From NCBI GenBank assembly GCA_002269645.1, contig NIVC01003234.1:1-64000 (forward strand): a stretch of 64,000 nucleotides of DNA, read 5' to 3'. Positions 7,398 through 42,483 of this stretch are shown here, piece by piece. This DNA comes from Macrostomum lignano. Its lineage: Eukaryota. The notes under the pieces were generated by a model. The model ran no database searches. It worked only from the letters and a program-made list of their open reading frames with translations, and had not been told where the DNA came from. The translations under genes and the position numbers were made by a program. Within the stretch, counting starts at the first letter, position 1; each line of letters starts with the position of its first letter.

Positions 7398-7566
7398 CTA
7401 GACCACAGATACTAAATACCGATATCTAGTAGCGATTGGCTGCTGATAAAAATTAGGGATTTCAGCATTAAATTCAGCATTGCGCTTTCGTGCCTACTAA
7501 AAGTAGCTTTAAAAAAGGAAATTTACAAGCGACGAGTACAGCGTGTATTTAGTATCTGTGATCTAG
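7398..7566. mobile_element. MITE-like element with 22-bp terminal inverted repeats
   Basis: ctagaccacagatactaaatac (7398-7419) versus gtatttagtatctgtgatctag (7545-7566), one mismatch. Confidence 0.6.
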
Positions 7567-9651
7567 GCAGCGATACTCGAAACAAACCGCCGAAGAACGT
7601 TACGCTGGCAAGACTACTGCGGTCTGGCAGGGTAAGCGCAGGCATTCCGGGGCGGAGTCAACGCGCTTTCAATGCGCGGAACGTCGCCTAATGAGGTGGA
7701 TTGAAAAACGGGAGATTGAAAAGAAGACAGGAGAGAGGAAGAGGAGAAACCCCCTCCAAGCCCGTTGCATGGTGGGTTGGCTGGCCTTGCCCGATCTGTA
7801 ACTCCGATTGCACTGGACCCACAACGCTCTCAGCCCTTATAAGCTAGATTTCGCTCTTCAGCCGTGCCACGTGCTCGAGGGCTTCTGCATGATTGGTCGG
7901 CTGATTTAAAGTCGGGGTAAACTTTAGTGGGGTGCAGACCGCGTGACCCTTCGCTGGGCCAAGCCGGTTTTCTGAAGTCGCATTTTGACCAATTCACTGA
8001 CATGTACCCTTTGTCTTAAGCTCTTAGTCTGACCTTAAAAAAAGAACAAAATATCAATAACTAATATCAAATAACAAATAGCAACAAATGATAACAAATT
8101 GCGCAAGATGCTGACACTACATACTGTACGTCCTCACATCCTTTATATAATAGTACACATGTGGGTACGTCCCAAAACTTTCATGTACGTGTAGGTCTAG
8201 TCAATATAATGCAACTCGATTTTCTATTTGGTTCCTTCTCATAACGTGAATTTTAGCTTTATCTCTGCACATCTGTATCCAGTGCTCAATTCTAATGAGT
8301 TTTACGATCAAAATACAATTTAGAGAATAGTCATGTAACTGCATTATATCGGCGGTAAGCTAGCTGGTGGTGTTATGGTGGTGATTATTAACAGTGTGAT
8401 GATTAAGGTTTAGGAGTCAAATTGAACAGAATTGTATTGAAGCTTCTTTGGGTACACTTTTATTAATGTATGTTAATATTTAAAGAAGCAAATAGGATGG
8501 ATTTTTAAGAGGAACATCGATTGAGAGGACTGGCGAATCCGAGATTGGGATGACGAATCTTACTAATCCTAAACTTTCTGAAGTCAAACCTACTGTATAT
8601 CTATATCTAGAATTTTTAAATAATAAATTTAATGTAATCTATAATACAACTTTTTACGAACTTTGGAAGTCTCTATACTATACTGTAATTAATTGTTTTA
8701 ACGATCAAATTGAGTCCGTAGTTTATTATCCGTTTTAAATGTAAATTTTTGCTCAATTATTTAAGTCAATTTTATTATGAAACCTCGTTAAATAAAACAA
8801 TAAGCTTTTACGACAATTATTATATGAGCTATATATATTAGTGGATCGACTAACACTATTCAATGTTTTATTTAGTTACATATAACAGTATTTTATCATT
8901 ATTGCTCAGGATCTTGAGTTGATCCAGAAAGGTATCAAGTTAATGGACTATAGATGCGTTTGATATTGGATCTTAGATTTATGTGTATAACATTTATATT
9001 TAATTTAATATCGGTTATATTTTTAAACAATTGTACGTGTCTGTTTATATTGTGTTGAAAAGTCAATCATTATCACACAATAATATTTACATTCAAGGTA
9101 AATCTATATCCAGCCTTCTGAAGTGTATAAAATGTATAGAAAAATCGAAATTATACATTTGTCTTATGCAAAAATCAATTCAGTTAATATTATATTAAAA
9201 ACACAAAAATTCAACCTAATTTATCCTGTTTAAGTTTTCAACCTCCAAACAACTGTTACTAAGTGAAGAAGGCATTTATATTAAATTTCTTATCAAAAGC
9301 TTATAAAGTGGAGCTTCATTTTGATAATATCTGAATGAGTGTGTTAATAATGACCAGCTCAAATTGTAGCCAGTGAGAACCATAAATGATAGTTGAAAGC
9401 ATCCATGATGTTGATTTTTCGTTTAATTCTTAAGTCATGATGCAGATTGGCCTTAAAAGTATTAGTATTTTTTAATTTGAATTTTGTTGTATCAAGTGTT
9501 AATAAATAATTTATTAACTATCAATTTTATTAATTTACACACTATATTTTAACAAAATAATTGTGCAGCATTGCTTATTTTTGCAAATTGTGTTTTATGT
9601 TCAAGGCTGTATAATTAATGGCACTATGATGCCTTAACTTACCTGCATGCA

Positions 9652-11839
9652 ATGGCCACAGAAGATGAGATTGAAGATGGGCCTGGAGCCGCCTACCAGG
9701 TCTTCCTCAACATGGAAGCAGTGCTTGACAACCTAAAGCTATTGGACTATGACAGGGAATATTGCAAGTAAGCAAAAAAACAGCCATATTGGAGCCAGAC
9801 TGCAGTTCATATCTGAGTCCATGAGCATTTTTCAATTGAATTTAGCAGCAATTTCACTACAAGTCACCCCTGATTTTTATAAACAGGCAGCTGCACCACA
9901 AACCCATCTCGCGGCACTACTTCGCCATGGCAACCAACTCGGGCGAGCAGTTCCACGCCTTCGGCTGCCTGGCCTCCTGGCTGGTCCGGATGGGCGGCAA
10001 AGACATGGAGGAGCCGCAGGAGTACGACGACCCCAACGCCATCGTCAGCGGCATTCTGGACGCCGTGCGCAGTCTTGGGCACAGCATCGACTTTCCGCCG
10101 AGCAAGCTGAAGTCCGGCTCGGGACCGCAGGTGGTGTACGTGCTGCTCAAGCTCTCAGAGGAGGCTCTTCAGGTGAGCGTGATCTTTTATAGCGTGAAAT
10201 AAATCGATAACTAAATCTATCAGATATAACAATCAACGCGTTTGATTCTGGCGCCGGGACCCCTAGTTTCGTGCGCGGTCGCATTAATTTGGGGCTTGTG
10301 TGCACGAAAAGATTTACACCCATGAGGGAGTTGAGCAATGGGCAGAATTGCCTCACCGCTCGCTAGCTGTGGGACGGTGTCGTCGAAGGCGTTGCGTCTG
10401 GGGCCTACAAACCTGCAATTAGTATTTTTAATAACACTTAATATTTTCTTGACTTACAAAAATGTAAAACGAGGTTACATTCTGCAGGGTAGCCAGCGAT
10501 TCTCTCTCTAGCTAAACTATGTGCGGAGAAAAACAGCAGCTATCGCTTATTTATACACCTTAGAAGCATTGAGCCAAGCTTCGAACTTCAGACAGAAGGA
10601 ACTTCCTTTCATTCAGAAATTTCATGCCTAACAGCTTTTCAGTCTTTCTGTCGGTAGATCCGGCTGCAGAGTTTCCAACCCCACCCACCCACCTGTCGCA
10701 GGTGCGCCGGTTCGTGTTCGACAAGCCGCGCTACCCGACTGACGCCGGCGAGGACCACGTCGATGTCATCGAGGACGAGTCGGAGTCGGCGGTGAAGACT
10801 CTGGACGACCAGGGCGGCGTGGCCGACGAGTTCTCCGACGACGACTTCATCGAGGATGAGGACAACGTGCCGGACGTGGACGGCCTGGCCAAGATGGCCG
10901 CCGCAGCGTCCGCGGCCGCCGGAGGCTCCCAGGGCGACGCCGTGCTGAAGCCGGAGGTGATCCTGGAGTCCAACACCGACTCCACCGAATGGATGCTGGA
11001 GGTGGAGCGGGTGCAGCCGCAGCTCAAAGTTGTTCTGCGCGCCGAGGGCAAGGACTGGCGGGTGCACCTGGACTCCATGCACCAGTATCAGAAGGCTATC
11101 GGAGACTGCTATGGACAGGTTGGTGGCCTGTCTGCCTCCGCCCCGCTCTCCCCCTCTGCTGTTCTTCTGTTCCACCGCGTCGTTTTGTCATCTTCATGGC
11201 CACATCTGACTCCATTGACTCACTGGCGCTCTTGGTCTCCTTGACCTTCACTGCCCTCCGTGCCTACCTCCCTGACTCTCCCATCACTGACACCCCAATC
11301 GCTGACTCCTCAATCGCTGACTTCTCAACCGCTGACTCCTCCATCTATGACTCCCCCATCTGTGACCCCCCATCTCTGAATCCGCAACGCTCACTCCTCG
11401 ATGCCAGGTCCAGCAGCAGCTGAAGCGCATGGAGGAGGACATCGGACGCAGTCTGGAGAAGCTGGGCAGCAGAGAGAAGTATCTCAACAGCCAGGTGGAA
11501 GGCGCGCTAAGGGAGCTCCGGGCCGCGCAGGACCGCCTGGCCGAGGCCCGCGAGCGCTACAAGCAGGCCTCCGGGGGCATCAACGACCGCGGCCGGCAGC
11601 TGCAGGAGATCTCCGAGGAGCTGGAGCGAGTGAAATCCGAGATGGAGGAGCGCGGAAACTCAATGACGGACGGCTCGCCGCTGATGCGAATCAAGAAGGC
11701 CCTGCAGCGGTTGAAGAACGAGCTCAAGGAGATGGACATCCGGGCCGGGGTCCTTCAGCACATCCTGCTGCAGACCAAACTGCGGGAGAAGACGCTGCGG
11801 GGTGCCATGGCAACCGAAGAGGCTGGCTACCTGTTCTGA
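9652..11839 (+). CDS. IFT57: Intraflagellar transport protein 57 (HIPPI); exons 9652-9767, 9887-10172, 10702-11118, 11408-11839
   Basis: GPGAAYQVF, SRHYFAM.TNSGEQF, QEYDDPNA, DFPPSKLKSG, EWMLEVERVQPQLKV, KDWRVHLDSM, LEKLGSREKYLN and SMTDGSPL match IFT57. All introns are GT-AG with consistent phases. Confidence 0.95.
10250..10415 (+). mobile_element. Diverged relative of the SINE at 17328, in IFT57 intron 2
   Basis: Shares the blocks cattaatttggggct (10282-10296) and aatgggcag..gcctc (10337-10354) with the full SINE. Confidence 0.4.
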
Positions 11840-12784
11840 CCTGGGGTTCGGACTGCGGATCTCAGTTGGGGTGGGACAGTTCCAGCCTTTGCATATGCTG
11901 CACCAAAGTACGGTTCTTTTGGCATCTGAAAATGACTGGTAAAACTGTGTCTAAGATTTCTGTCACACAAAATACATTCCTTACAGTGTTTGCTCGTCTT
12001 TTTACAATAATATTTATTGCGGCTTAAGTCTGCGGCTTTGTCAGTCGCATTAAAAAGCTAATTAAAATTTTGCAGCTTGTTTATTTTCAAGCTGCATGCA
12101 TAAGTTGCCGTCAAATGCACTTTAAGTTCCTGTCAGGATGTCATGCTTGAAGAAGACTGCAGAAAATTCGTCTCAGCCAAAGAAGTTCCAAACTTTTGCT
12201 AGAGCAAAGGGATAATCTTCTCTGCATGATTTCAATATTCAGGCGGCACTGTACATATTCCAATGGCAGCTAAAATAGCTTTCATGTGCATGTGGCCTGC
12301 GCGCTGTGTCAACTTTACGCTTGAGGGGCGCAGCTTAACAGTGTCTTTAGTGTCAAGTTCGAGGTACGCACAAATGAAATATTCGACGCAAGTTGAGACA
12401 CTTTCACATTTTGCCATGAAGAAGTTGAGCCCCGAAAAGCTTAGAGAAGGCAGTGTACAGCATGACTGAACTGAGAGTCGTGAATGATAGCCGGCCTTGT
12501 TTACACCGCCAACAATTGTTGGCCATCAATGCAAATCACACCAATGGTGTACATGGTGAACCAGCCGTGACGAAAAAGTATGTACATGTACAAGCCATGT
12601 GATCGCTTAAAATAGGTCTCATTTGATGGCGGCGTATGAGTAAACGAGCCTTGACTCCCTTAAGAGATGGAGTGCTCGACAGGGCCGAAAAATGAAGTGC
12701 CAAACGTACATAAATCAATCAGATAACTGTAGGAGGGTTGCCGGACGCTCGATCTCGGCGACATCGTCCAACTATTACCAGCGC

Positions 12785-12935
12785 TGAGGCAGTTCTGCCC
12801 ATTCCGCTGAGTCCTGAGCACATACAATCGCGCGGATACTGTACGCAGGCACTCCCTCATACACACACGCTCACGCAGTGTGTACAGCAGCCCTGACTTT
12901 CTAATTGTCAGGCATATTCACCCTAGTGCGCCTGG
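12785..12935 (-). mobile_element. SINE body fragment (same family as 17328..17688)
   Basis: The reverse complement aligns with ~17490-17615 (atgcct.acaatt..aagt.agggc.gctgtacac..gtatccgcgcg.ttgtatg..ctcagg..gcggaatgggcag). Confidence 0.7.
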
Positions 12936-12973
12936 CCAATTTTTAGTGACAGTAGCTCGCGAGAATATGTATA

Positions 12974-13435
12974 TACTCAGCAACAGCTAAACCCCCCCCC
13001 AACTCACGCTGTCACACGGCCCAAAAGTTTTGTATGCCATCGGTGCAGACTCAGAAATGTGTGAAGGCTGCCGCCGCCAGACGCGAGCGCAAAGTGCGGC
13101 ATGGGGGATTTGGGGAGGGGGTGGCGCAACTCAAAGTCTCCAGACATGAACCCCATCGAGCATGTCTGGGACTTTGTAAAGCGAAGAGTTCAGCAGGATG
13201 CCCCACAGAATGCTGAACAGTTGCGACTGGCGGTGCTGAATGCCTGGCAGCAGCTGCCCCAAGAGTTCATCAACCGGCTGGTGATCAGGATGCCACGACG
13301 AGTCACGGCACTTTTGCATGCTCGTGGTTCCTACACACGATACTGAGACTAGAATTAAAGACATTGCTTAACTTTTGTGCCCGTGTGACAGCGTGAGTTG
13401 GGGCCGGGGGGGGGGGGTTTAGCTGTTGCTGAGTA
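12974..13435 (+). mobile_element. Second, shorter Tc1 deletion derivative of the same family as 6008..6659
   Basis: Same TIRs, TA flanks and near-identical internal sequence. It lacks the ~240-bp segment between caactcaa and agtctccag. Confidence 0.92.
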
Positions 13436-13860
13436 TATATAGTCAAGACAAGAACTTGACCTCTTTTGACTACTCAAAGTCTATAGTGATAGTGGTGGGG
13501 ATATATGCACTATGGGCAAAAGCTTGATCATATTTGGCCTTAGTAAAAACCTGCCACCCCCAAATTTGCCGTGTCTGGACTTTGTATATATAATAAAGAG
13601 AGTATTTTAATTAATTAATTAATTTTTGGCTTATCTGGGCTAATTTTAAGAAAACCTGAAAAGTTGCATGAGCCAATATGCCTATACATTAATAATCCTG
13701 AATCCGCCACTGGTTTTCGGAATCGGAATCACCAACATCTATTTTCTATAGTGAAGTGCTTCCAAGTTGTACTGCAGACTAAGAACGTTTGATTTTAGTT
13801 TTTTGGTTTTGTTTTGAAATTGAAATTCAAAGTTCTCGTTTCATAGAAACACTTTTTATA

Positions 13861-14120
13861 GGGCCTTTTCATATTACCAATTCCAGAACCAGAATCGGTT
13901 CGGAATTCCAAGAAAAACAGCTGTATAACTATTAAACTCTGTTAATATTTGACTGCCTTAACAACCTAACTTAGCACAATTTTTCACTTTCTTCTTGGCG
14001 ATTGTCATTCAATAATAAAAACTTTATAGCACGTATCTCCCTCTAGTTATGGAGACAAAAAGTTATACTTCACAAATTGGTTCTGGTTCTGGAACCAGAG
14101 CAAGCAATATGAAAAGGCCC
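13861..14120. mobile_element. 260-bp MITE, PIF/Harbinger-like ends
   Basis: TIR gggccttttcatatt...aatatgaaaaggccc with ATA on both flanks. Confidence 0.65.
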
Positions 14121-14807
14121 ATACACTACATTGTATACTACTACATTACACAGGTCACAAGACCGACAAAAAAGGTTTCTATAATCTACAGACTACAGTA
14201 ATGAGTAATTATACATTAGAAGTCATCAGATCAAATAAAGATGGAGCAATCCAAAATCATGGCAATGCATAGGCTGGGCAAAGCCATAAGCATAGGACCT
14301 TAAATTTTTTGAAAGTATAAATCAATGAAATCGTCAATGTTAGGAAAAAATTAAAATGTCAGATTGATTAGAAATAAATATTTGAAATTTTAGTAGTCAT
14401 ATTAAGTAGTCATATTAGAAAACATAGTATATATTTTATACATCAACATACTGCTAGGCTAGAGGTAGAATAGGACCATACATAGACAATTTCAAAATCC
14501 TAGAAACCCAGTTAGGCTGATTTGTGATTAGTAGGGATCTTAATTGGTTAAACCTATATATATTGGAGTATATAGAATCCTATATATTTATTATATAGTC
14601 TAAATATATATATGATCCTAAACTTTAAATCCTAGGGGCCTATCCAATTTTTAAGCATGCACATTTTATATTGGGCCCTATTGATGCCTTTTTGTATGAA
14701 TGGCACATTATAAGGGTTAGGACCTAAACTTTTAGTAAATACTTTCTTTTCTAGCATTTTATTGTTTATATTATAAATATCAACTAGGCCTATCAACGAT
14801 AGAACAA

Positions 14808-15510
14808 GGAAGTGCTTATCCCCCTTGGTCCTATGCTAATAATTCTAATTTTATTCACACAGAGCTATTTCAATAATTTTCAGCTTATCTCCACAGCAGC
14901 TTATTGAAATTTATTGAAATCTATATGATCACTTAGTCATGTTGGCAGCTAAGCAGATATTTAAAATTCATCATTTTAATGACATTTAAGTTTTAACAAA
15001 GTACTCTATACTATTCAGTAGTTTATTCAGAAGATTTGTAAAATAATGAAAACAATAAGATAGTTTTTGCAAGCAAGTTTTGTTTAGAATAAAAAAATGA
15101 ACACATATTTAGATAGATATAGTCATATGTCATATGGATATATTAATATATGATGAACACTTAAGATAAAAAATACAATAGTAGATTTTTAATTAAAATT
15201 ACAAATATAAAACTATATAGGCCTAGAGCATGCTAATAAACTATATGTAAATACCAGATGCAGAAGGACCTCTAGGGTCCTTGAGCAGATTTATTTGAGG
15301 CTACTCTATTCCAGTAAGCTGCTATGCCATAGAGATAAACTGCAAATTATTGACATTGATCCATGTAGATAAAATTGGAATTTTTGACATGGCCTAGACT
15401 TGAATGGTGGCAGCAATAAGCTGCAGTGGGGATAACTAAAAATTATTTACATGGATCTAAATGAATAAAATTGGAATTATTGGCATAAGACCATGGGGAT
15501 AAACACTTCC
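14808..15510. mobile_element. Non-autonomous Mutator-like (MULE) element
   Basis: About 100-bp degenerate TIRs (ggaagtgcttatcccc.. / ..ggggataaacacttcc) and an exact 9-bp direct repeat atagaacaa at 14799-14807 and 15511-15519. Confidence 0.8.
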
Positions 15511-16607
15511 ATAGAACAAATATCAACTATACCAACTATCACCTATGCAACCTACTTGCCAATGGCATTTATTGTAATAGGAAAGCTCATATTGCATTGA
15601 CTATTTGATAAAACCATGATAATATAGGAAGGCAATTAAAAGGGTGTAGTCATTTTGTTTGCCATCTTTATCTATTTGTCTACTAGAAAACAAATTGACT
15701 ATTTATTCAGTTGTAGTGGCTCTAATTATTCTATTTAGCAATTAAATAAATTTAGTAGTTCATTATTTGATTACTTAATTGCATAATTGGTTTCAAAGTG
15801 TATTTTTATAGATTGTTTTAGGCTAGCCTTTAGGCATTATTTTCTTGTTCATGCTATAAGTATAAGAAAACATCACAGAGTAGGTTGAAGCATTCATAAA
15901 AACTTAATTTATTATAAGTTATAATTATTTCAAATAATATAGTATAGGCCTATTAGGCTTTTTGCATATGCCAAGCCTAGGAAGTATATCTAAAACTAAA
16001 TGTATTATTTTCAAGTGTCATTTTTATATATGCACTTATATTTCTAAGAAGAACTTGCTTATATATAAAGCAATTATTAGTCATTTGTAAAACTTCAATT
16101 TATAAGTCATAATTCATAATTGACTGCTACTTTGGAAGTAGACATAATATTATTAAATGATAAAACAATTAAATTGATGAATTGGCTATACATTCTATAA
16201 TTACATTTTCACCTAGATTTAGTTGCCTAAATGTGACAGTTAGTTGCCTAACTCATTATTTAACTAGAACATATAGGGAAATAATGATTACCTTGTGAAA
16301 ACACATGATTAACTTAACCTATAAGAATTTAAAATGAAAATAGATAAGTTCAATCTATCATAACTTGATAGCTTGATAAAATAGCAAGTGCCACTTTGCC
16401 TATACAGTCCATATAGATAAATACAATTAATTCACAAAGGACTATTGAGTATAAGTGCTTCCTTTTTCACTACCCAGTGGGTCAATAATTTTGTTTCCAT
16501 TTTAATAGCATAAATAGCTAATATAACTGGATAGACAGCCAGTTTGTTTCTGTGCCACTACCATGTACTTTTGATTTTTCTATTGAACTGGCACCAATCA
16601 GGTTAAT

Positions 16608-16817
16608 GTAAATGCCAGGTGTAATCCAATTGGGTTAGTGTAAATGCCAGGTGTAATCCAATTGGGTCAGTGTAAATGCCAGGTGTAATCCAATGGGGTT
16701 AGTGTAAATGCCAGGTGTAATTCAATTGGGTCAGTGTAAATGCCAAGTGTAATCCAATTTGGTCAGTGTAAATGCCAGGTGTAATCCAATTTGGTCAGTG
16801 TAAATGCCAGGTGTAAT
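16608..16817. repeat. 32-bp tandem repeat (gtaaatgccaggtgtaatccaattgggtcagt)
   Basis: About 6.5 copies ending just before the acceptor of the RMDN exon. Confidence 0.9.
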
Positions 16818-16834
16818 CCTACCTGTTGCTGCAG

Positions 16835-18917
16835 CCGCGTGGTATTCGAGTCAGCTGGCGCTGGGTCCTGCTGTGGCTGGCGGCCCCGCTGGCCGCTGGC
16901 ACCTGGCTGGGCGTCCTGCTTGAGCACTGCCGCTGCGCCGGCCGGCAGGAGGCCCTGCTGTCCGAGCTGATTGGCCGGCTCAGCCAGCTGGAAGCGGAGC
17001 TGCGCCAGCTGCGGCTGAAGCTGCGCGCCCGCCGGCTGCGTGGCGGCGCCAGCACCGCCGCCTCGACCGCCTTCTTCTACGACGCTATCGGCGGCGGCGG
17101 CGCCAGCAGCGGCTCGGACGAGTTCTTCGACGCCGAGTCCGAGGCTGGGAACGCGTCCGCGGTGATGTTCAGCCTGGCCGACTCTTCGGCCGTTCCGATT
17201 GAGGACGCGGCCGAGCTGCTGGACAAAGTGGACGGCCTGCTGGAGAGCGGCGAGGACGGCCACAGGGAGGCACACAGCATTCTGCGCGACCGGCTCAAGA
17301 AAGACCGGAGATTGGCCAACCAGCCAGGGGGCCGTAGCCCAGCGGTAGCGCAGCTGCTCTGGTGTGCCGCGACCCAGGCTCGATTCCAAGTGCAGCCACA
17401 TTAATTTGGGGCTGGATTGGAATCTTGGCTTGGCTCGCTTGTGCAATTAACGGCCTTGAGAGCCAACCCCCCCAAGGCGCAGTGAAGTGTACATGCCTAA
17501 CAATTGATAAAGTTAGGGCCGCTGTACACTCCTGTGTGAGTGCGTGCCTGCGTAACGTATCCGCGCGCTTGTATGCCTGCTCAGGGGAGTCGGCGGAATG
17601 GGCAGTAATGCCTCTCGCCGGTTGTGTGCCTATGACGCTTAAATTGCGCCAGGGTGCACACAACCCCCCTGCCTCTAATAAAAAAAAATGGCCAACCAGC
17701 CAGAGGTTGCTATGGGGACGCTTGCCAATACACTTCTGGTTGCTATGGGGACGCTTGTCAATTCACTTGAAGTTGTTATGGGGACGCTTGCTAACGAACC
17801 TCTGGTTGCTATGGAAACTCGGACAGTAGTAAACCTTTAGTAGTTATGGGAGATCAGAGAATGATAAACCTCTAGCTGCTATGGGAGATCTGACGATAAT
17901 AAGCCCGTGGTTGCCATGGGAACTCTGACAACAATAAACCTCTGGTGGCTATGGGAAAACTGTAGCAAAGCCATAACCGAGCTACGTCTTCAATACTGAC
18001 TCAGGTTTTACTTCGCTGGGCCAAGGCCTGTCTGCAGCTGCACTTTGTTGAAGCGTCTCCCGGCGGCAACGCCTCGGTTGCTAGGGACCTGCTTGGCCAG
18101 GCTGACGCCGCGGCCGCGCAGGCGCTGGAGCTGGACACTGGCTCCGCAGAGTGCCACGCCGTGCGAGCGCGCACGCTGGGTCTGATGATCCGCAACCTGG
18201 GCATCAAAGACAAGGTGAACTTCCGCGATTACTTGTGGGACATTCACTTGACCCAATTTAGTTGTATGGGGAAGATCTTGACCTTGTCGTCCTACAACCA
18301 GCGCCCATTCCGCTGACTCCCGAGTACAGACAAGGGCGCCAATACTGCACTCAGGCACGCACTCAGACACGCGCTCACACGGGGTGTACAGCGGCCCTGA
18401 CTTTCTAGTCGTCAGGCATGTACACTCTCTGTGGCTTGGGGGCCTATGGGCACAATCTTGACCTTATTTGACCTCTGTACTTACCTTTTTCGTGACCCGC
18501 GTCCAGGTGAGCGGCGGCGTGAAGTTCCGGCAGCTGGTGGATCGCGGCCTGGAGCTGGAGCCGGAGCACGCGGACCTGCTGGAGCTGAAGGCCTGCTTCC
18601 TGTACGAGGTGAGCCGCGTCAGCTGGCTGGAGCGGCGCACGGCCGCCTACCTGTTCGGGCCGGACTGCCTGCCCGAGGCCAAGCTGGAGGACGCCCAGCG
18701 CCTGATGGACCGCGCCCTGGCCCTGCGCCCCGGCAGCGTCACCGCGCTGTACTGGGCGGCCCGCTGCCGCCTGGAGTCTGGGCAGGGCGACCGCGGCGGC
18801 GCCGACGTCACCGAGGCCCTCCGGCTGCTCCACCAGGCCAAGGAGGCCCGCGTCAACGGCGTCGAGGATCGGCGACTGCGCGATGAAGCCGAGAAGCTGC
18901 TGAATGCCTACGCCTGA
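16835..18917 (+). CDS. RMDN: Regulator of microtubule dynamics (RMDN/FAM82, RMDN2/3-like: TM, coiled coil, FFAT, TPR-like domain); exons 16835-17327 (SINE-interrupted), 18005-18214, 18507-18917; start exon not located
   Basis: N-terminal TM segment, coiled coil, DEFFDAESE, VLLRWAKAC, ALELDTGSAECH, FRQLVDRGLELEP and LYEVSRVSWLERRTAAYLF match the RMDN C-terminal domain. Confidence 0.85.
17328..17688 (+). mobile_element. Full-length tRNA-derived SINE with poly(A) tail and 15-bp TSD
   Basis: A box tagcccagcgg 17335-17345, B box ggctcgattcc 17377-17387, A-tail to 17688. TSD tggccaaccagccag at 17313-17327 and 17689-17703. Confidence 0.88.
17706..17958. repeat. Degenerate 33-35-bp tandem array carrying X-box-like 14-mers
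   Basis: Eight units at 17706, 17739, 17772, 17805, 17840, 17875, 17910 and 17945. Confidence 0.75.
18300..18435 (-). mobile_element. Antisense SINE body fragment in an RMDN intron
   Basis: gcccattccgctgactcc..gtgtacagcggccctgactttct..caggcatgtacac is the reverse complement of the SINE body. Confidence 0.7.
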
Positions 18918-19444
18918 AGCAGCACCGGCCGCTGGTGCGAGCAAAGCAGAGAGGCTTCCGCGACCTTCAAGTGACCCCGGTGGGATTGCAGGCAACCTTC
19001 CGACACATCGATTGCGTAACTTGCCGACCCTGGGCACCTGTGGCGTCGCTTTGTATAGTTGCTTATTGTTTTTGTTCCTGTCATGCGGACACCTCAGCTT
19101 GCTGAAGAGGAACAATGCGAGCATTTTTGTGCCGCCCCCTCCCCCATTCTCTGCCGTGTTTATGGCCTGAATTTGTGTTTGCTTGTGTTTCATACTTCAT
19201 TTATTTGATATTATCAATTCATTTTGTACGGCCGCGCTGCCCTTGAATGCTGAGCCGGCTGGGCCCACCTGAGCGATGCATTCCTCACTTCGCGATGAGC
19301 ACTGAGTGGAAAGCATTGACAGCTCCGTTCGGTTGAGTTTTGGCTCAGTGTAGGCGGATTTGAATTGGCGCGCATTTTTGTTTGACTGCTTTTTCTTGTG
19401 ACCGCGAGTTTTAGTCGTGCACTTTGTCTTGCTTGTTTTTGTCT

Positions 19445-20030
19445 AGATCCCTGGGGATAATCCGGCCTAAGATCCCTGGGGATAATCCGGCCTAAGATCC
19501 CTGGGGATAATCCGGCCTAAGATCCCTGGGGATATCCGGCCTAAGATCCCTGGGATATCCGGCCTAAGGTCCTTGGGTTGATGATCCTATCTAAGATCCC
19601 TGAAAATAATTCCAGTCTAAAATCCTTGGGGATAATTTCAGTCTAAGATCCTTGGGGATAATTCCGATCTAAAATCCCTGGGATAATTCTAGTCTAAGAT
19701 CCTTGGGTCGGGATAATTCCAATCGAAGATCCCTGGGTTGGGATAATTCCGGTCTAAGATCCCTGGGTTGGGATAATTCCGGTCTAAGATCTCTGGCTTG
19801 GGATAATTCCGGTCTAAGATCTCTGGGTTGGGATAATTCCGGTCTAAGATCCCTGGGTTGGGATATTCCAGTCTAAGATCCCTGGGTTGGGATAATTCCG
19901 GTCTAAGATCTCTGGCTTGGGATAATTCCGGTCTAAGATCTCTGGGTTGGGATAATTCCGGTCTAAGATCCCTGGGTTGGGATATTCCAGTCTAAGATCC
20001 CTGGGTTGGGATAATTCCGGTCTAAGATCT
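19445..20030. repeat. 25- to 30-bp tandem repeat (ctaagatccctgggttgggataattccggt)
   Basis: About 20 copies, with the unit lengthening along the array. Confidence 0.9.
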
Positions 20031-24170: not shown

Positions 24171-25539
24171 GCAGCATGACTGATTTATAAGCCATAAGTT
24201 GAGCAGACTGATAAGGTTGCATGGCAAACTTCTGACCTAAACGGGGATCCAAACTCAAAGCATCCTCAATCAAACTCACCGCCAGGTGGCCAAGGCGGCA
24301 GCCTCACTGAGCAACCTCTCGAATGCCGCAGACCGCCGCTCAAGCTGCTGGTCCCGTCTGGGCGGCAGCTGCTCAGCCTGCTGTGCCGCCGCTATCATCA
24401 GCGCCAACTGCTGCTGCGGCTGCATCTTCAGCATCCTCAGCATTCTCAGCTTCTTCAGCTTCATCATAAGCGTTGCCCCAGCCCGAAGCTGCTGCTGGCC
24501 TGCTCCCTCTCCAGCTGCCAGTGGCCTTCCAGCCGCCTGGTTGCGCCGCCGCCAGCTGCTGCGCACTTGAGGTCGCTGGTTCGCGCCTGGCATCAGTGCG
24601 CCGAGAGCTTGCTGCTCTGTCAGGACAGCCAGAAGCAGCAACAGCAGAAGCAGAATGAACAGAGCGGCTCTTCCAGCGACGGCGGCAAAGACGAGGGCGA
24701 AAAGCAAAAACAGGACGAGAACGAAAAGAACAATGAGTTCACCACCCGCATGATGCTGCTGCTGCTCGCCCAGTGGATTGTCATGGCCATGTTCAGCTCG
24801 CATTGGTCTGACCGCCTCGCCGCCTCCATCAGGTGCGGCCTGTGACCTTTCTGACAGATTTCCAAGGCTTCCAGGTCCCAAATATCACTCTCCGTATCTC
24901 TCTTCCCTGTCTCCCAAATCCCCTTTTCCTCTCTTCATTTTTCCAAATCCTATTTTCCTCTCCTCACTCTCCCAAATCCCATTTCCCACTCCTCACTCTC
25001 CCAAATCCCATTTCCCACTCCTCACTCCCAAATCCCATTTCCTACTCCTCACTCTCCAAAATCCCATTTCCCAACCCTCCACCAGAGCGACCTCGCCGCC
25101 GCGCCTGCTGCTGAGCTGGCAGGACGCGTGCGCCCTGCTCGCGGCCGGCGAGGTGTCCAGCATCGTCCTGCGCAGCGACCTCGGCCTGGCGCAGCTGCAG
25201 CTGCAGCCGGGCGCCTGCTGGCGGGCGAGCCGGTGGAGCGGGCACCAGCGCGCTGCTCTGTCTGAACCGCAGCGTGGCCAGCAAAGTCGGCCAGCTGCTC
25301 GGCCTGCCGCCCGAGGCGATGCGCGACTTCCTCAGCCGTTCAAAATTCTTCAGCGAATCCGCGCCCTGCTAGTTCAAGCGGCAGGAGCTGTTCGCGCTGT
25401 ACTTGGGCCAGTACAAGCTGGCGGCGCTGCCGGAGTCCAGCCAGGTGAGCTGCAGGGATGCCAGGGGCTGGAGATATGCCATGCTGAGCAGGGCTGGCCA
25501 GGCTGCTCAGGCGGCTGAGCAGGCCGAGCCGGCCGGCTG

Positions 25540-26105
25540 TGATAGCCAGGGTGGCAGCCCAGGCTGAGCAGGGAATGCCAGACTGAGCAGGGATATGCCA
25601 GGCTGAGCAGGATATGCCAGCTGAGCAGGGATATGCCAGGCTGAGCAGGGATATGCCAGGCTGCTGAGCAGGATATGCCAGGCTGAGCTGTGATATGCCA
25701 TATGGCTGAGCAGGGATATGCCAGGCTGAGCAGGATATCCCAGCTGAGCAGGATATGCCAGAGTGCTGCTGTGATATGCCAGGCTGAGCAGGGATATGCC
25801 AGGCTGAGCTGTGATATGCCACTGAGCAGTAGGTATGCCAGGCTGAGCTGTGATATGCCAGGCTGAGCAGGGATGCCAGGCTGAGCAGGGATATGCCAGC
25901 CAGGGATATGCCAGGCTGAGCTGTGCCAGGCTGAGCAGGGATATGCCAGGCTGAGCTGTGATATGCCAGACTGAGCTGTGATATGCCAGGCTGAGCAGGG
26001 ATATGCCAGGCTGAGCTGTGATATGCCAGACTGAGCTGTGATATGCCAGGCTGAGCAGGGATATGCCAGGCTGAGCAGGGATATGCCAGGCTGAGCAGGA
26101 ATATG
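25540..26105. repeat. Degenerate 20-bp tandem repeat (ggctgagcagggatatgcca), SPG7-like intron
   Basis: Visible periodicity. Confidence 0.9.
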
Positions 26106-26434
26106 CCATCTTCACCTTCACATCATCAACGCCCACCCCAGCAAGCGGCTGGCCGCGCTGACCCCCGGCGCGGGCGCAGAACATCGCCAACTGCGAGGCG
26201 GCGCTGATTGCGCTGCCATGCCAAGTCGCCGTTGAAGCCGCCGATTTTGAGCCGCGCTGGAGCGGGCGGCGCCTAGAAGCCGCCCGGCCGGCCCCATGAC
26301 CAAGGAGGAGCGGGAGCGCACCGCCTACAGCGAGGCCGGCAAGGCCTGGTGCCTGGATGCTGGAGACCCCCGCCCGTGGTTCGAGTCAGCATTGTCCGAA
26401 GGCGCGGTGGTGCCGGAGCCGGTCTGCAGCGACT

Positions 26435-26895
26435 AAGCACAGACAGGTGAGCTGGGGGAGTCTAGTAGCTGCTCTGAGCACAGACAGGTGAGCTGGGGAG
26501 TCTAGTAGCTGCTCTGAGCACGGACAGGTGAGCTGGGGGAGTCTAGTAGCTGCTCTGAGCACGGACAGGTGAGCTGGGGGAGTCTAGTAGCTGGTCTGAG
26601 CACGGACAGGTGAGCTGGGGGAGTCTAGTAGCTGGTCTGAGCACGGACAGGTGAGCTGGGGGGAGTCAGTAGCTGCTCTGAGCACGGACAGGTGAGCTGG
26701 GGGAGTCTAGTAGCTGCTCTGAGCACGGACAGGTGAGCTGGGGGAGTCAGTAGCTGCTCTGAGCACGGACAGGTGAGCTGGGGAGTCTAGTAGCTGCTCT
26801 GAGCACGGACAGGTGAGCTGGGGGAGTCAGTAGCTGCTCTGAGCACGGACAGGTGAGCTGGGAGTCTAGTAGCTGCTCTGAGCACGGACAGGTGA
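26435..26895. repeat. 41-bp tandem repeat containing the exon end and 5' splice donor
   Basis: About 11-12 copies of gagcacggacaggtgagctgggggagtctagtagctgctct. Confidence 0.95.
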
Positions 26896-27224
26896 ACTGG
26901 AACTCCGTCCACAGAAAGCTGTACACCCGCCAGGCCCTGCTGGAGGCCATCGCCTGCATGCTGGCCGGCCGGGCCGCTGAGACGGTCGCCTTCAACACGG
27001 TGAGCAGCGGCGGCAGCGATGAGCAGCGGGCAGCCACCGACTTGGCTTACAGGCTGGTGCGCGAGCTGGGCATGTCCGACCGCATCGGCCACCTCAGCTT
27101 CGACCAGGAGTCCGCCTCCGTGAACTCGCCAGTTCGCCCCTTCTCGCGCCGGACCGAAGCCCTGTTCGACAGCGAGGCCCAGGCAGTGCTGGGCCAGGCT
27201 TTCCGGCTGGCCAGGTGAGACTCC

Positions 27225-27760
27225 CCCCCTCCCCCAGTGCGGTCACCGACCTCCCCAGTGCGATCACCGACCTCCCCCAGTGCGATCACCGACCTCCCCC
27301 AGTGCGATCACCGACCTCCCCCAGTGCGATCACCGACCTCCCCCAGTGCGATCACCGACCTCCCCCAGTGCGATCACCGACCTCCCCCAGTGCGATCACC
27401 GACCTCCCCCAGTGCGATCACCGACCTCCCCCAGTGCGATCACCGACCTCCCCCAGTGCGGTCACCGACCTCCCCCAGTGCGATCACCGACCTCCCCCAG
27501 TGCGATCACCGACCTCCCCCAGTGCGATCACCGACCTCCCCCAGTGCGATCACCGACCTCCCCCAGTGCGATCACCGACCTCCCCCAGTGCGATCACCGA
27601 CCTCCCCAGTGCGATCACCGACCTCCCCCAGTGCGATCACCGACCTCCCCCAGTGCGATCACCGACCTCCCCCAGTGCGATCACCGACCTCCCCCAGTGC
27701 GATCACCGACCTCCCCCAGTGCGATCACCGACCTCCCCAGTGCAATCACGACCTCCCCCA
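27225..27760. repeat. 22-bp tandem repeat (ctcccccagtgcgatcaccgac)
   Basis: About 24 copies filling the last SPG7-like intron. Confidence 0.95.
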
Positions 27761-28419
27761 GTCCTACTCATTCTAACAAAGCGTCTCGTCCCTGCCCCAA
27801 TCCGAGCAGGGAGGTTCTGGCCAGCAACCGGGGCCGTCTGGACCGGGTGGCCCGCGCCCTGCTCGCCAAGGAGGAGCTCGGGCACGAGCAGCTGCTAGAG
27901 CTGCTGGGCACATCGCCGCACCCGAAGCCGGAGCTGGCCGAGCTGCTAGACCTCGCCAAGGATTGAAGCCGGCTCAGTGCCCAGTGACCCAGAAAGTTTC
28001 ATCATGCTAAAAGTCCACTATCTCCCCAAAATCAGAGAATTCAGTGAATCCCCTCTCACCTCTGCAGGTGTACCAACGAGTGCACCTTCAATTTCCCAAT
28101 TAGTAGTGCATTTTGTACTTTTTATTGTCTGCCGCTCGATTAAGGTAAAATAGACTTTAATTTGTCACCTGGCTGACATCACGTAATTCTGACTAGCTTT
28201 ACTGCTTTTTTCGGCCATAGGTTCTATACCTGCGTAAGCTGTTTAGCCGCACCTTAATTAATGCGCCTAAGTTACTACTGACTGACTACTTATTACAGAA
28301 GATGCTAATCCTGGTTTAAAATTATATTCAGTCAAGTTTCGGTGCTTGAATTGTTCGCAGTTTCTTGACAGCTTTTTTTTGCCGTTTTCTGCAGTCAGCC
28401 AAGGAACATTTGGAACTAA

Positions 28420-39700: not shown

Positions 39701-42483
39701 ATTCTCGAGTCAGGATGGCCGAGTGGTCTAAGGCGCTGCGTTCAGGTCGCAGTCCTCTTCTGAGGGCGTGGGTTCGAATCCCACTTCTGACAAGATTTTT
39801 TTCTCTTTTTAATTAATTTTTCTACAAAAAATTTAATTAACGCCGACATATTTGCAAAGAACGTATCAAAAATTTCTTTGTTTTCAGCATCATTTTAAGA
39901 GATTTTCCAATTTTATTCATTTTTTAGCAAAATGTGTATTTGAAGCCATTTTAATAAACAATTTTTTGGTGCCAGCCGATATGTTTCGAAAATTACATTA
40001 TAGAGCGGGAATTTGTATATGCAAGAAAATATTGGAAATAACTTCCAATCAACTCCCACCCATGATTCACAGCGCTGCACTGCGCCGCATTCTATGGCCA
40101 TCTCGAGGTCGTGCAGCTGCTGCTGGACTCCGGCGCCGACCCCTGCGCCCTGGACTTCTCAGGCGCCACCGGCCTTCACCTGGCCGCCATGAACGGCCAC
40201 CACGAGGTTTGCCTGCTGCTGCTTCACAGCGGCTGCGACCTCTCGCTGCTGGACTGCGAAGGCATGGCGCCGCTGCACTACGGCGCAGACCGCGGCAGTC
40301 TGGAGGTGGCCCAGGCCCTGGCCTTCAACCCCAGCTGCAACGTGAGCATCCGCACTGCCGTCACCGAGGACACCCCGCTGCACATGGCGGCCAGGTGGAG
40401 CTACCGCCAGATCGTCGCCTTCCTGGTCTCCTGCGGCGCCGATCCGCGCACCGTCAATCGGCGCGGCCAGGCGCCGTCCGGCGTAGCCGCCAGCCCGCAC
40501 GTGGTCGAACTCCTGGCCACCGCAGCGGCCAACGCCGCCAACAGCCGACGACCGAAGGCGGCTTCGCAGGCAGCGGCGACGCCAACGGTCGCTAAAAAAC
40601 CCGAGGCCGAGCGGCCGCCGCGGCCGCCATCGCCGGCTCCGGTCCAGCCGAAACAGCCGACGTCGCCGCGTCGCCCTTCGTCTCTGTCGTCGTCCAGGAT
40701 GTCGGCGCCGCCGCAGTCTGAGCCCGCCGGCCTCCAGCAGCAGCAGCAGCGCGTGGAGAAGATGCTCCGCGCGGCTGCCGACGGCGACATCCAGCTGGTG
40801 CGGCACTACCTCGGCCTGCCGCCTGGCGGCGCGGACAACGAAGCCGACGAGGACGTCGACGCCGATCTGGACGGAGCGTCGTCGGCGACGGCCACCGAGG
40901 CCTCGGAAGAGGCGGTGGCTCCGTCACCCAGCAGCCTGTGCCACCCGCTGTGCCAGTGCCACCGCTGCGCCCCACTGCAGACCGCCGCAGCCGCTTCCTC
41001 GCCGTTCGACGCCAGCGGCCGCAGCTCCGCCGCCCCGGCGCCGCCCGCACTGACGGTGAATTCGGCCAGCAGCGACGGCTTCACCCTGCTGCACGTGGCC
41101 GCCATCCACGGCCACACCCGGCTGGCCGGCTTTGCGCTGGACCGCCGGGCCGCCCCGGACTGCCGCACCCGCGCCGGCGGCTTCACGCCCGTCCACTTCG
41201 CCTGCCAGCACAGCCGGCCGCAGGCGCTGCGCTTCCTGCTGCACCGGGGCTGCGACCCGGCCGCCAGGGACAACCAGGGCAACACGCCGCTGCATTTGTG
41301 CGCCATGAAGGGCCACGTGGACTGCGCCAGCGTCATCTTGGAGGTGAGCAGACTGCTCATTGCTTTGCCTCTGCTTTATAGTACACATTGTACTTTTCCC
41401 GTTCAACCTAGACAGCCACTGTTCAATCTAGAGGCAGCCACTGTTCAATCTAGAGACAGCCACTGTTCAAACTAGAGACAGCCACTGTTCAAACTAGAGA
41501 CAGCCACTGTTCAATCTAGAGACAGCCACTGTTCAATCTAGAGACAGCCACTGTTCAATCTAGAGACAGCCACTGTTCAATCTAGAGACAGCCACTGTTC
41601 AATCTAGAGACAGCCACTGTTGAATCTAGAGACAGCCACTGTTCAATCTAGAGACAGCCACTGTTCAATCTAGAGACAGCCACTGTTCAATCTAGAGACA
41701 GCCACTGTTCAATCTAGAGACAGCCACTGTTCAAACTAGAGACAGCCACTGTTCAATCTAGAGACAGCCACTGTTCAATCTAGAGACAGCCACTGTTCAA
41801 TCTAGAGGCAGCCGCTGTTCAATTTAGACAGTTTTATCAAAATTGAGCAAAAAATGCCTATCAATTTTCGTCAGTAGTATGAATCGCGTGTTAATTTTAT
41901 TTATTCCCCCCACCGCCGCCGCCCAGACCGGGCCGGCCTGGCTGGTGAACTCGGTGAACGGCCGCGGCAACAGCCCGCTGCACGAGGCTGCCCGCGCTGC
42001 TACCCGGCCATGTGCGACCTGCTGCTGCGCCACGGCGCCACGCCCGACCAGCGCAACCGCCAGCAGCTGGCGCCCTATCAGCTGACCGGCGATCCGCAGG
42101 TCCTCGGCATGCTGCGCCGCCGTCCGGAAGCTGCGCCAGCCTCGCCGACGCTGCGAGCACAGCTGGCAGGCGCTGCGGCTGCCGCAGACCTGGAGACCGA
42201 GGCCCGCAGCTCTTCCGGTGTGGGCCCGAGCCCGCCCTCCTCCCTGCTCGACTTCACCCTCACGCCGTCCTCCTCGCTGCTCACCGACCAGCCGCTGCCG
42301 CCGCCGCGGTCGCAGGATGACGAATCGTCCGTGTCGGGCAACGCCGAGGACGACGGCGACGCCAATGGCGACGAGGACGGCGGCGAGAAGCGGCGCTCAG
42401 CGGCGGAGCTGTGCCGGCCGCGGCCAGCCGACTACAAGCTGACGTTCTCGTCCGACTGCGACAGCCCGCAGCACGCGGCCTGA
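33787..42483 (+). CDS. ANKRD27: ANKRD27/VARP (VPS9 domain plus ankyrin repeats); exons 33787-33942, 35085-35207, 35854-36269, 37817-38684, 40073-41343, 41927-42483; apparent 1-nt deletions at ~36018 and ~41998
   Basis: YDEDLSENPFF N-terminus, VPS9 motifs ADDLLPCLVFLL and YFLSSLEAAMDY, two Zn 'fingernail' motifs CHPLCRCAKC and CHPLCQCHRC, and two ankyrin blocks. Splice phases are consistent. Confidence 0.92.
33960..34850. repeat. 35-bp tandem repeat (gggatctgtctggttcaggctgtctgcctgctgca), ANKRD27 intron 1
   Basis: About 25 copies starting right after the donor. Confidence 0.95.
35320..35755. repeat. GA-rich 17-bp repeat (gatgagtgagagtgaga), ANKRD27 intron 2
   Basis: Direct inspection. Confidence 0.9.
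36320..36982. repeat. 23-bp tandem repeat (agaccaatatcccaggtgtgctc), ANKRD27 intron 3
   Basis: About 28 copies. Confidence 0.95.
39709..39792 (+). tRNA. tRNA-Leu(CAG), in ANKRD27 intron 4
   Basis: GTCAGGATGGCCGAGTGGTCTAAGGCGCTGCGTTCAGGTCGCAG..GCGTGGGTTCGAATCCCACTTCTGACA: class II cloverleaf, anticodon loop ttCAGgt, and a T-run terminator just downstream. Confidence 0.97.
41405..41825. repeat. 22-bp tandem repeat (agagacagccactgttcaatct), ANKRD27 intron 5
   Basis: About 19 copies. Confidence 0.95.

What the first reader, a model, noticed from the sequence alone, without database searches (positions are those of the whole stretch)
17313..17707. SINE inserted into the last codons of an RMDN exon, displacing the native splice donor and offering a new in-frame one
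Seen: removing the SINE and one TSD restores ..AAC CAG CCA GAG|GTTGCT, which splices in phase 0 to VLLRWAK (giving NQPE-VLLRW, fitting RMDN). With the SINE present, the old donor sits 376 nt downstream (17706), and read-through hits TAA at 17402-17404. The SINE's own A-box region offers GCG|GTAGCG at 17344/17345, in phase 0, which would replace E with GGRSPA. Inference: either a fresh null allele or immediate rescue by exonisation of 17 nt of SINE.
Basis: partly seen in the sequence, partly recalled or inferred. Interest (0 to 1): 0.7.

Follow-up and report, generated by a model that had tools for sequence, protein, structure and literature searches.

The report
SINE in exon, rescued by splicing

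Summary
The window is the first 64 kb of Macrostomum lignano contig NIVC01003234.1 (Mlig_3_7 assembly).

- **The insertion.** A 361-bp SINE (17328-17688) has pol III A and B boxes, an AATAAA signal and an A9 tail. It is flanked by perfect 15-bp target-site duplications. It lies in sense orientation, 2 nt upstream of the exon 2 donor of an RMD1-3 (RMDN3/PTPIP51-like) gene.
- **The empty site.** A paralogous contig (NIVC01000735.1) lacks exactly 17313-17688 and carries the 15-mer once. Its model, PAA77566.1, reads NQPE|VLLRW from the donor GAG|GTTGCT.
- **The filled site.** The window and a second contig that matches it at every gap-free aligned site are annotated with a protein reading NQPGGRSPA|VLLRW (PAA52479.1 / PAA54249.1). 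Window exons 16844-17344, 18005-18214 and 18507-18917 translate exactly to it.
- **Nature of the evidence.** That annotation was built only from RNA-seq and assembled transcripts, so the junction has indirect RNA support. I could not inspect reads.
- **What is not shown.** Frame rescue is shown; functional rescue is not. The change removes a Glu that is acidic in about 71% of relatives and lengthens a turn that almost never varies in length.

This is a clean new example of a known kind of event, TE-derived 5' splice-site use.

The parts
16835..17327 (+). Native part of the coding exon ('exon 2') of the RMDN3-like gene. The acceptor AG is at 16833-16834 and the GenBank CDS is 5'-partial from 16844. 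The exon encodes an N-terminal hydrophobic helix, a coiled-coil-like stretch and an FFAT-like EFFDAESE motif (17120-17143).
   Evidence: Open frame seen. The exon set translates exactly to P0002. Pfam RMD1-3 hit.
17313..17327 (.). 5' copy of the 15-bp target-site duplication TGGCCAACCAGCCAG.
   Evidence: The 15-mer is present once in empty-site contig L001.
17328..17688 (+). SINE of 361 bp, in sense orientation to the gene. A box TAGCCCAGCGG at 17335-17345; B box GGCTCGATTCC at 17377-17387. Body shared with related elements at about 17469-17615. AATAAA at 17677-17682 and A9 tail at 17680-17688.
   Evidence: The A+B box pattern occurs only here and at the true tRNA-Leu in the window, against 0.005 expected per shuffle. 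Related core copies at 12786-12933 and 18303-18442. The element is absent from L001 and identical in L002.
17328..17344 (+). The 17 nt of the SINE head that are part of the annotated CDS. With the preceding G they encode GGRSPA in place of E.
   Evidence: Window 16844-17344 + 18005-18214 + 18507-18917 translates exactly to P0002 (PAA52479.1/PAA54249.1).
17345..18004 (+). New 660-nt GT-AG intron. Its donor GCG|GTAGCG is formed by the last G of the A box plus the D-loop-like TAGCG. It contains the remaining 344 nt of the SINE, the 3' TSD, the old last 2 exon bases and the old 299-nt intron. The acceptor is unchanged (CTCAG|GTTTTA).
   Evidence: The annotation pipeline is RNA-only.
17402..17404 (+). 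In-frame TAA reached if the SINE donor is not used.
17389..17391 (+). Second in-frame candidate donor inside the SINE (CAA|GTGCAG, GT at 17390-17391). It is not used in the annotated model.
17689..17703 (.). 3' copy of the target-site duplication.
17704..17711 (+). Displaced ancestral exon end (AG) and donor (GTTGCT, GT at 17706-17707). The donor is now 376 nt further downstream, in phase 1 and beyond the stop.
   Evidence: The same site is the donor in use in L001, where GAG|GTTGCT starts a 299-nt intron and the model equals P0001.
18005..18214 (+). Next coding exon (VLLRWAKAC...GIKDK), phase 0 at both ends.
18507..18917 (+). Last coding exon, with stop TGA at 18915-18917. It is intact.

Best explanation
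In one of the duplicated copies of an RMDN3/PTPIP51-like gene of Macrostomum lignano, a SINE with tRNA-type pol III promoter boxes retroposed in sense orientation into the target TGGCCAACCAGCCAG. This put it 2 nt upstream of the exon-intron boundary and created a 15-bp duplication (shown).

The insertion pushed the native donor GAG|GTTGCT 376 nt downstream, out of frame and behind an in-frame TAA (shown). The spliceosome instead uses the GT at SINE positions 18-19 (GCG|GTAGCG, the 3' edge of the A box) together with the unchanged acceptor at 18004. The rest of the SINE is removed as part of an enlarged 660-nt intron, and 17 SINE bases stay in the mRNA. This step is supported indirectly, by the RNA-derived GenBank gene model.

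The frame is kept. One Glu is replaced by Gly-Gly-Arg-Ser-Pro-Ala, a net gain of 5 residues, in the turn before the conserved xLWRLAKA helix of the TPR-like domain (shown by translation). Whether the altered protein works is not known (inferred, open).

The uninserted copy of the gene in the same neopolyploid genome keeps the original junction. This redundancy would have let the insertion persist.
For: - **Identity of the window.** It is 100% identical to NIVC01003234.1 at the same coordinates.
- **TSD and empty site.** L001 lacks exactly 17313-17688 and holds the 15-mer once.
- **SINE-bearing second contig.** L002 matches the window at every gap-free aligned column between about 7.5 and 20 kb, SINE included.
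- **Filled-copy model.** P0002 reads NQPGGRSPAVLLRW and equals the translation of window exons that use donor 17344|17345.
- **Empty-copy model.** P0001 reads NQPEVLLRW and equals the translation of the L001 exons.
- **Source of the annotation.** The Mlig_3_7 GenBank annotation came only from STAR/StringTie RNA-seq assemblies and BLAT-mapped de novo transcripts. These were merged with TACO (isoform-frac 0.75) and given ORFs by TransDecoder; no ab initio predictor was used (PMC5730564). Reads from the empty paralog lack the 17 SINE bases, so they cannot create this junction.
- **Donor quality.** The native donor was itself off-consensus. GTTGC compares with the species motif GT[G/A]AG, found at about 65% of donors (PMC8629364). 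The SINE donor GTAGC is therefore not clearly weaker.
- **Downstream exons.** They are intact.
- **Family membership.** Pfam RMD1-3 E 1.8e-13; PDB 7cc7 RMDN3 E 2.9e-13.
- **Position in the protein.** The model places the insert mainly in the loop 159-165 between helices 137-158 and 166-184, with its last two residues at the start of the next helix. Local pLDDT is about 71-73.
Against: - I could not inspect reads or junction counts. No transcript-derived protein from this species other than the GenBank models is in the searched collections.
- The two filled contigs match at every gap-free aligned site in the gene. An intact downstream ORF therefore says nothing about selection.
- Isoforms using other GTs would carry the TAA and could be abundant but degraded or filtered out. 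An example is the consensus-like TGT|GTGAGT at 17536.
- The replaced Glu is E or D in 106 of 149 family representatives. The turn has no length variation in 55 of 56 carefully aligned relatives. The protein may therefore be impaired.
- The tRNA ancestry of the SINE head is weak. Rfam's tRNA model does not hit it, and ARAGORN finds a cloverleaf only at a 70% threshold.
Confidence: 0.82

Rival explanations
1. Effectively a null or hypomorphic copy. Most transcripts of the SINE-bearing copy read through into the TAA or use out-of-frame or post-stop donors and are degraded. The in-frame model is then a minor isoform or encodes a non-functional protein, and the copy is tolerated only because the empty paralog supplies the function.
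For: - In-frame TAA 58 nt past the SINE donor.
- A consensus-like GTGAGT at 17536, and several other GTs.
- The SINE donor matches only GT and +3A of the species motif GT[G/A]AG.
- The replaced Glu and the turn length are conserved across the family.
- A redundant empty copy exists.
- No time has passed for decay, so an intact ORF is uninformative.
Against: - The only model retained by an RNA-driven pipeline is the in-frame one. That pipeline drops isoforms below 0.75 of the major isoform.
- The native donor was no closer to consensus, yet it is used in the empty copy.
Confidence: 0.25
2. The SINE-bearing state is ancestral and the 'empty' contig arose by precise deletion between the two 15-bp repeats.
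For: Direct repeats can mediate precise deletion. The three copies show a mosaic pattern of differences, which suggests exchange between copies.
Against: - The deleted segment would have to be exactly one retroposon with an A-tail plus one repeat copy.
- The empty-site junction xx-PE-(F/L/V)LWR matches the motif and spacing of RMD-family proteins from distant organisms. The filled one does not.
- TSD-flanked retroposon insertion is the standard derived state (established knowledge).
Confidence: 0.03
3. Assembly or annotation artefact: the SINE or the junction is not real.
For: Mlig_3_7 is a redundant, repeat-rich draft. RNA-seq was mapped allowing up to 1000 multi-mapping positions.
Against: - The SINE with identical flanks is on two separate contigs.
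- The TSD and empty site are exact.
- The junction is a canonical GT-AG intron.
- A model with 15 extra coding bases cannot be produced by reads from the empty copy.
Confidence: 0.04

Closest known systems
TE exonisation through a TE-borne alternative 5' splice site (Alu, MIR, B1 and zebrafish HE1 cases; Sela, Kim & Ast 2010, PMC2911107)
   Same: SINE-derived bases enter the mature mRNA because a GT inside the element pairs with a pre-existing acceptor. The frame is preserved.
   Different: Classical cases start from intronic insertions, mostly antisense, and give alternatively spliced cassette exons. Here the SINE hit the coding exon itself, in sense orientation, and its donor replaces the constitutive one. 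Sela et al. found no TE insertions in mammalian internal coding exons, three in Drosophila, and very little exonisation in invertebrates.
Maize Ds/dSpm insertions in exons that are largely spliced out from donor sites in the element ends (wx and adh1 alleles; from my own knowledge, not checked here)
   Same: An exonic transposon insertion is removed from the mRNA by splicing. This leaves a short footprint of element sequence and a partly functional, in-frame product.
   Different: Those are DNA transposons, often using both element-borne donor and acceptor sites. Here a retroposon supplies only the donor and the old intron's acceptor is reused.
Canine SINEC_Cf insertions at or in exons that disturb splicing (for example LAMA3, PMC13500218; ATP2A2, PMC7291265; titles and abstracts seen)
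   Same: A recent tRNA-type SINE with TSD inserts at an exon or exon-intron boundary and changes splice-site choice.
   Different: The listed cases are disease alleles. Here the annotated outcome keeps the frame, and an intact duplicate gene is present.
Transposon-generated introns ('introners'; from my own knowledge, not checked here)
   Same: Mobile-element sequence ends up being removed as intron sequence, with splice signals partly supplied by the element.
   Different: No new intron is created here. An existing intron is extended 5'-ward by 361 nt and the exon end is remodelled.

Membership tests
SINE (pol III, tRNA-type retroposon) | Short non-coding element with internal A and B boxes at the 5' end in tRNA-like spacing | tested here: met
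   TAGCCCAGCGG at 17335-17345 and GGCTCGATTCC at 17377-17387. The combined pattern is found only here and at the real tRNA-Leu, against 0.005 expected per shuffle.
SINE (pol III, tRNA-type retroposon) | Head recognisably derived from a tRNA (cloverleaf) | tested here: inconclusive
   No Rfam tRNA match even at E<=10. ARAGORN reports a degenerate cloverleaf only at a 70% threshold.
SINE (pol III, tRNA-type retroposon) | A-rich 3' tail and target-site duplication, with an empty site elsewhere | tested here: met
   A9 tail and perfect 15-bp TSD. A precise empty site is present in L001.
SINE (pol III, tRNA-type retroposon) | Many dispersed copies in the genome; a partner LINE | not testable with these tools
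   Only two diverged relatives of the body (about 74%) lie in the window. No searchable M. lignano genome or repeat library was at hand. No paper on M. lignano SINEs was found.
Known SINE superfamilies (CORE, V, Deu, Ceph, Meta) | Shared central domain sequence | not testable with these tools
TE exonisation with a TE-derived 5' splice site | TE bases inside an annotated or observed mature transcript, bounded by a canonical GT-AG intron | tested here: met
   Exons using GT at 17345 and AG at 18004 translate exactly to the GenBank protein P0002. The annotation is RNA-derived.
TE exonisation with a TE-derived 5' splice site | Direct read or cDNA evidence and usage level of the junction | not testable with these tools
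   No reads or transcripts were accessible. Protein searches found only the GenBank models.
RMD1-3 / RMDN family (RMDN3/PTPIP51-like) | Match to the family profile above its curated cut-off | tested here: met
   PF21033 scores 50.7 bits against a cut-off of 26.7, E 1.8e-13. Human RMDN3 TPR domain 7cc7 scores E 2.9e-13. 360 relatives were found by phmmer.
RMD1-3 / RMDN family (RMDN3/PTPIP51-like) | RMDN3-type architecture: N-terminal membrane anchor, coiled coil, FFAT motif, C-terminal TPR-like domain | tested here: inconclusive
   Read from the sequence: WRWVLLWLAAPLAAGTWLGVLL, LSELIGRLSQLEAELRQLRLKL and EFFDAESE. The model has a long N-terminal helix. No dedicated predictor was run.

The most novel reading that the evidence does not exclude
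The tRNA-like head of this SINE family may regularly act as a ready-made 5' splice site, formed by the A-box end plus D-loop (GCG|GTAGCG). Sense insertions into exons upstream of an acceptor would then be largely spliced out at once. In a neopolyploid with spare gene copies, this could be a recurrent route to 5'-ward intron extension and exon-end remodelling in M. lignano, rather than a one-off lucky event.
Probability: 0.1. Interest if true: 0.65.

Novelty: new member of a known kind. Interest (0 to 1): 0.4.

Why it matters
TE insertions inside internal coding exons that survive are rare (none in mammals and three in Drosophila in the survey read). TE exonisation is also reported as very low in invertebrates.

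Here both the 'before' and 'after' states sit in one genome, each with an RNA-derived gene model. The case therefore shows directly how a retroposon can shift an exon end and enlarge an intron in a single step without breaking the frame. It also shows how recent genome duplication can shelter such an event. It is a tidy natural test case for splice-site choice in a transgenesis-capable flatworm.

It does not reveal a new mechanism. The gene models themselves are already public, although I found no description of the event.

Tried and rejected
- **Independent transcript evidence.** Two searches of the 5.8-billion-protein collection, one with the junction-spanning region, returned only the GenBank models plus one distant TPR protein. 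No RNA-seq-derived fragments turned up.
- **Papers naming the genes.** A search for Mlig022151 or Mlig000730 found nothing.
- **tRNA origin of the SINE head.** Rfam at E<=10 gave only a sub-threshold mir-788-like hairpin and a tmRNA fragment match. ARAGORN at default, -ps and -ps80 settings found nothing.
- **RNA structure as the reason 17345 is chosen over 17390.** Both candidate donors lie in predicted stems, and the fold is only z = -2.1 against shuffles. I dropped this idea.
- **TSD significance by counting 15-mers.** The count was swamped by the window's many tandem repeats. I replaced it with the empty-site comparison.
- **Turn-length statistic.** A fast MAFFT alignment of 151 sequences (149 relatives plus the two M. 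lignano proteins) gave an unreliable turn-length figure. I rely on the L-INS-i alignment of 56 relatives instead.
- **Polarising the 4 amino-acid differences between copies.** This was not possible. The nearest outgroup is only about 33% identical.
- **Homeolog versus allele.** This could not be settled. Differences from the empty copy are clustered at 15-20 kb, with almost none at 10-15 kb, a mosaic pattern.

Full report
**What is in the sequence**

- The 15-mer TGGCCAACCAGCCAG lies at 17313-17327 and again at 17689-17703.
- The 361 bases between the copies begin GGGGCCGTAGCCCAGCGGTAGCGCAGC and end CCTCTAATAAAAAAAAA.
- The coding frame of the upstream exon (...LKKDRRLANQP) runs into the element and stops at TAA 17402-17404.
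- Removing the element and one repeat gives AAC CAG CCA GAG|GTTGCT.

Downstream, the frame continues in exon 18005-18214 (VLLRWAKAC...GIKDK). The last exon is 18507-18917 and ends in TGA.

**Where the window comes from**

A protein search with the conceptual 'empty-site' protein returned one cluster from Macrostomum lignano. The cluster has two member sequences:

- PAA77566.1 (P0001, 368 aa), which reads ...ANQPEVLLRWAK...
- PAA52479.1 / PAA54249.1 (P0002, 373 aa), which reads ...ANQPGGRSPAVLLRWAK...

Their contigs were fetched. L003 (NIVC01003234.1) is 100% identical to the window at the same coordinates. The window is therefore the first 64 kb of that contig of the Mlig_3_7 assembly of the inbred DV1 line.

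**The empty site**

L001 (NIVC01000735.1) aligns to the window up to 17327 and resumes at 17689. The two matches share the same 15 bases of L001. In a three-way alignment the only large gap is exactly 17313-17688, which is one repeat plus the element.

L002 (NIVC01002944.1) carries the element. It matches the window at every gap-free aligned column from about 7.5 to 20 kb. L001 differs at 90 sites, clustered between 15 and 20 kb.

The 15-bp repeats are therefore a genuine target-site duplication. The assembly holds a filled state on two contigs and an empty state on one. [quoted passage not shown] The mosaic pattern of differences does not let me say whether filled and empty copies are homeologs or alleles.

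**The element**

- It has an A box (TAGCCCAGCGG, 17335-17345) and a B box (GGCTCGATTCC, 17377-17387).
- The combined pattern occurs only here and in the real tRNA-Leu at 39709. Block shuffles give 0.005 expected.
- It has an AATAAA signal, an A9 tail and a TSD.
- Its body (about 17469-17615) is shared at about 74% identity with two other elements in the window. One is at 12786-12933. The other is at 18303-18442, antisense inside the next intron.

This fits a pol III SINE. Its tRNA ancestry is weak. Rfam's tRNA model does not match, and ARAGORN finds a degenerate cloverleaf only at a 70% threshold. I found no paper describing M. lignano SINEs. I could not compare the element with the known SINE superfamilies.

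**What happens to splicing**

Window segments 16844-17344, 18005-18214 and 18507-18917 translate exactly to P0002. The same holds for L002. L001 segments 10001-10486, 10786-10995 and 11287-11697 translate exactly to P0001.

- The public model of the empty copy uses GAG|GTTGCT, with a 299-nt intron.
- The public model of the filled copies uses GCG|GTAGCG at 17344|17345, with a 660-nt GT-AG intron that ends at the same acceptor.

The Mlig_3_7 GenBank annotation was made only from RNA (PMC5730564):

- RNA-seq was mapped with STAR and assembled with StringTie.
- A de novo transcriptome was mapped with BLAT.
- The two were merged with TACO at isoform-frac 0.75.
- Transcript boundaries came from trans-splicing and poly(A) reads.
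- ORFs were called by TransDecoder.

Reads from the empty paralog lack the 17 SINE bases and cannot produce this junction. The model is therefore indirect but real RNA evidence. I could not see the reads, and no other transcript-derived sequence turned up.

**Alternatives inside the element**

The GTs before the stop are at 17334 (phase 1), 17345 (phase 0), 17362 (phase 2), 17364 (phase 1) and 17390 (phase 0). A consensus-like TGT|GTGAGT lies at 17536, beyond the stop. The displaced native donor at 17706 is now in phase 1.

The species' donor motif is GT[G/A]AG at about 65% of sites (PMC8629364). Neither the native GTTGC nor the SINE's GTAGC fits it well, so the replacement donor is not obviously weaker than the one lost. 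RNA folding did not discriminate between 17345 and 17390.

**The gene and the protein change**

Both proteins match Pfam RMD1-3 above its cut-off (E about 1e-13). Both match the solved TPR domain of human RMDN3/PTPIP51, 7cc7 (E 2.9e-13). The exon also encodes an N-terminal hydrophobic helix, a coiled-coil-like stretch and EFFDAESE (17120-17143). From my own knowledge, EFFDAESE looks like a canonical FFAT motif, which would give an RMDN3-like architecture.

The SINE-derived codons GGG GGC CGT AGC CCA GCG replace GAG. Glu162 becomes GGRSPA, a net gain of 5 residues. The last two new codons (Pro-Ala) mimic the native Pro-Glu.

A structure model built from a 3-sequence alignment has mean pLDDT 66.8 and about 71-73 locally. 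It puts the insert mainly in the loop 159-165 between helices 137-158 and 166-184, with its last two residues (Pro166, Ala167) at the start of the next helix.

The spot is nevertheless constrained.

- Among 56 relatives aligned with L-INS-i, all but one have no residues in the insertion columns. They share the spacing x-[PAVC]-[ED]-[FLV]-L-W-R.
- Across 149 representatives the replaced position is E or D in 106.

Frame rescue is therefore shown, but functional rescue is not. The two filled contigs match at every gap-free aligned site in the gene, so the intact downstream ORF carries no information about selection.

**Verdict**

The 'immediate rescue' branch is backed by the existing RNA-derived gene models. 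The 'null allele' branch remains possible only in the weaker sense of a hypomorphic or partly unproductive copy.

The event belongs to a known kind, in which a TE-borne 5' splice site leads to partial exonisation and removal of an exonic insertion by splicing. It is an unusually clean instance in a group where such events are reported to be rare (PMC2911107).

Noticed in passing
window 16829-16846: The exon's acceptor CTGCAG|CCG (16834|16835) fits the M. lignano spliced-leader trans-splice acceptor motif [T/C]TNCAG. The 35-nt SL ends in ATG (PMC8629364). Joined here, that ATG would be in frame (M-PRGIRVSW...), directly before the hydrophobic N-terminal helix. This would explain why GenBank calls the CDS 5'-partial, starting at 16844. 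I did not verify it with reads, and the annotated start 9 nt further in is unexplained.
   Followed up: partly
window 16607-16819 and 17704-17962: A 32-bp tandem repeat (6.7 copies) runs right up to the exon's acceptor region. The intron after the SINE is made almost wholly of 33-35-bp tandem repeats. The first unit carries the native donor G|GTTGCT, and later units repeat GGTTGCTATGG, so the intron contains a series of donor-like copies.
   Followed up: no
window 18303-18442 (minus strand) and 12786-12933 (minus strand): These are diverged relatives (about 74%) of the SINE's central body. The first fills much of the 292-nt intron 3 in antisense orientation and is present in the empty-site paralog too, so it is older.
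   Followed up: partly
window 17369-17438: An imperfect hairpin is formed by the B-box/3' part of the SINE head and the following bases. It gives a sub-threshold mir-788-like Rfam match (21 bits against a gathering score of 90, E 0.049). This is most likely a chance match to a hairpin.
   Followed up: partly
window about 24300-28000; L001 16035-21697; L002 17704-22074: The downstream AAA/Peptidase_M41 (FtsH-like) gene is annotated as an 833-aa product in L001 and L002. In the window's contig only a 178-aa Peptidase_M41 piece is annotated. L002 additionally has a zf-LITAF-like gene between the two. The copies differ by tandem-repeat expansions here.
   Followed up: no
window 7500-20000 versus L001: Differences between the empty and filled copies are strongly clustered. 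There are 0 differences in 10-15 kb, 4 in the 9-kb bin, and 86 of the 90 between 15 and 20 kb. This suggests recombination or gene conversion between the duplicated copies.
   Followed up: partly
window 39709-39792: An intact tRNA-Leu(CAG) gene: 56 bits in Rfam, also called by ARAGORN.
   Followed up: no
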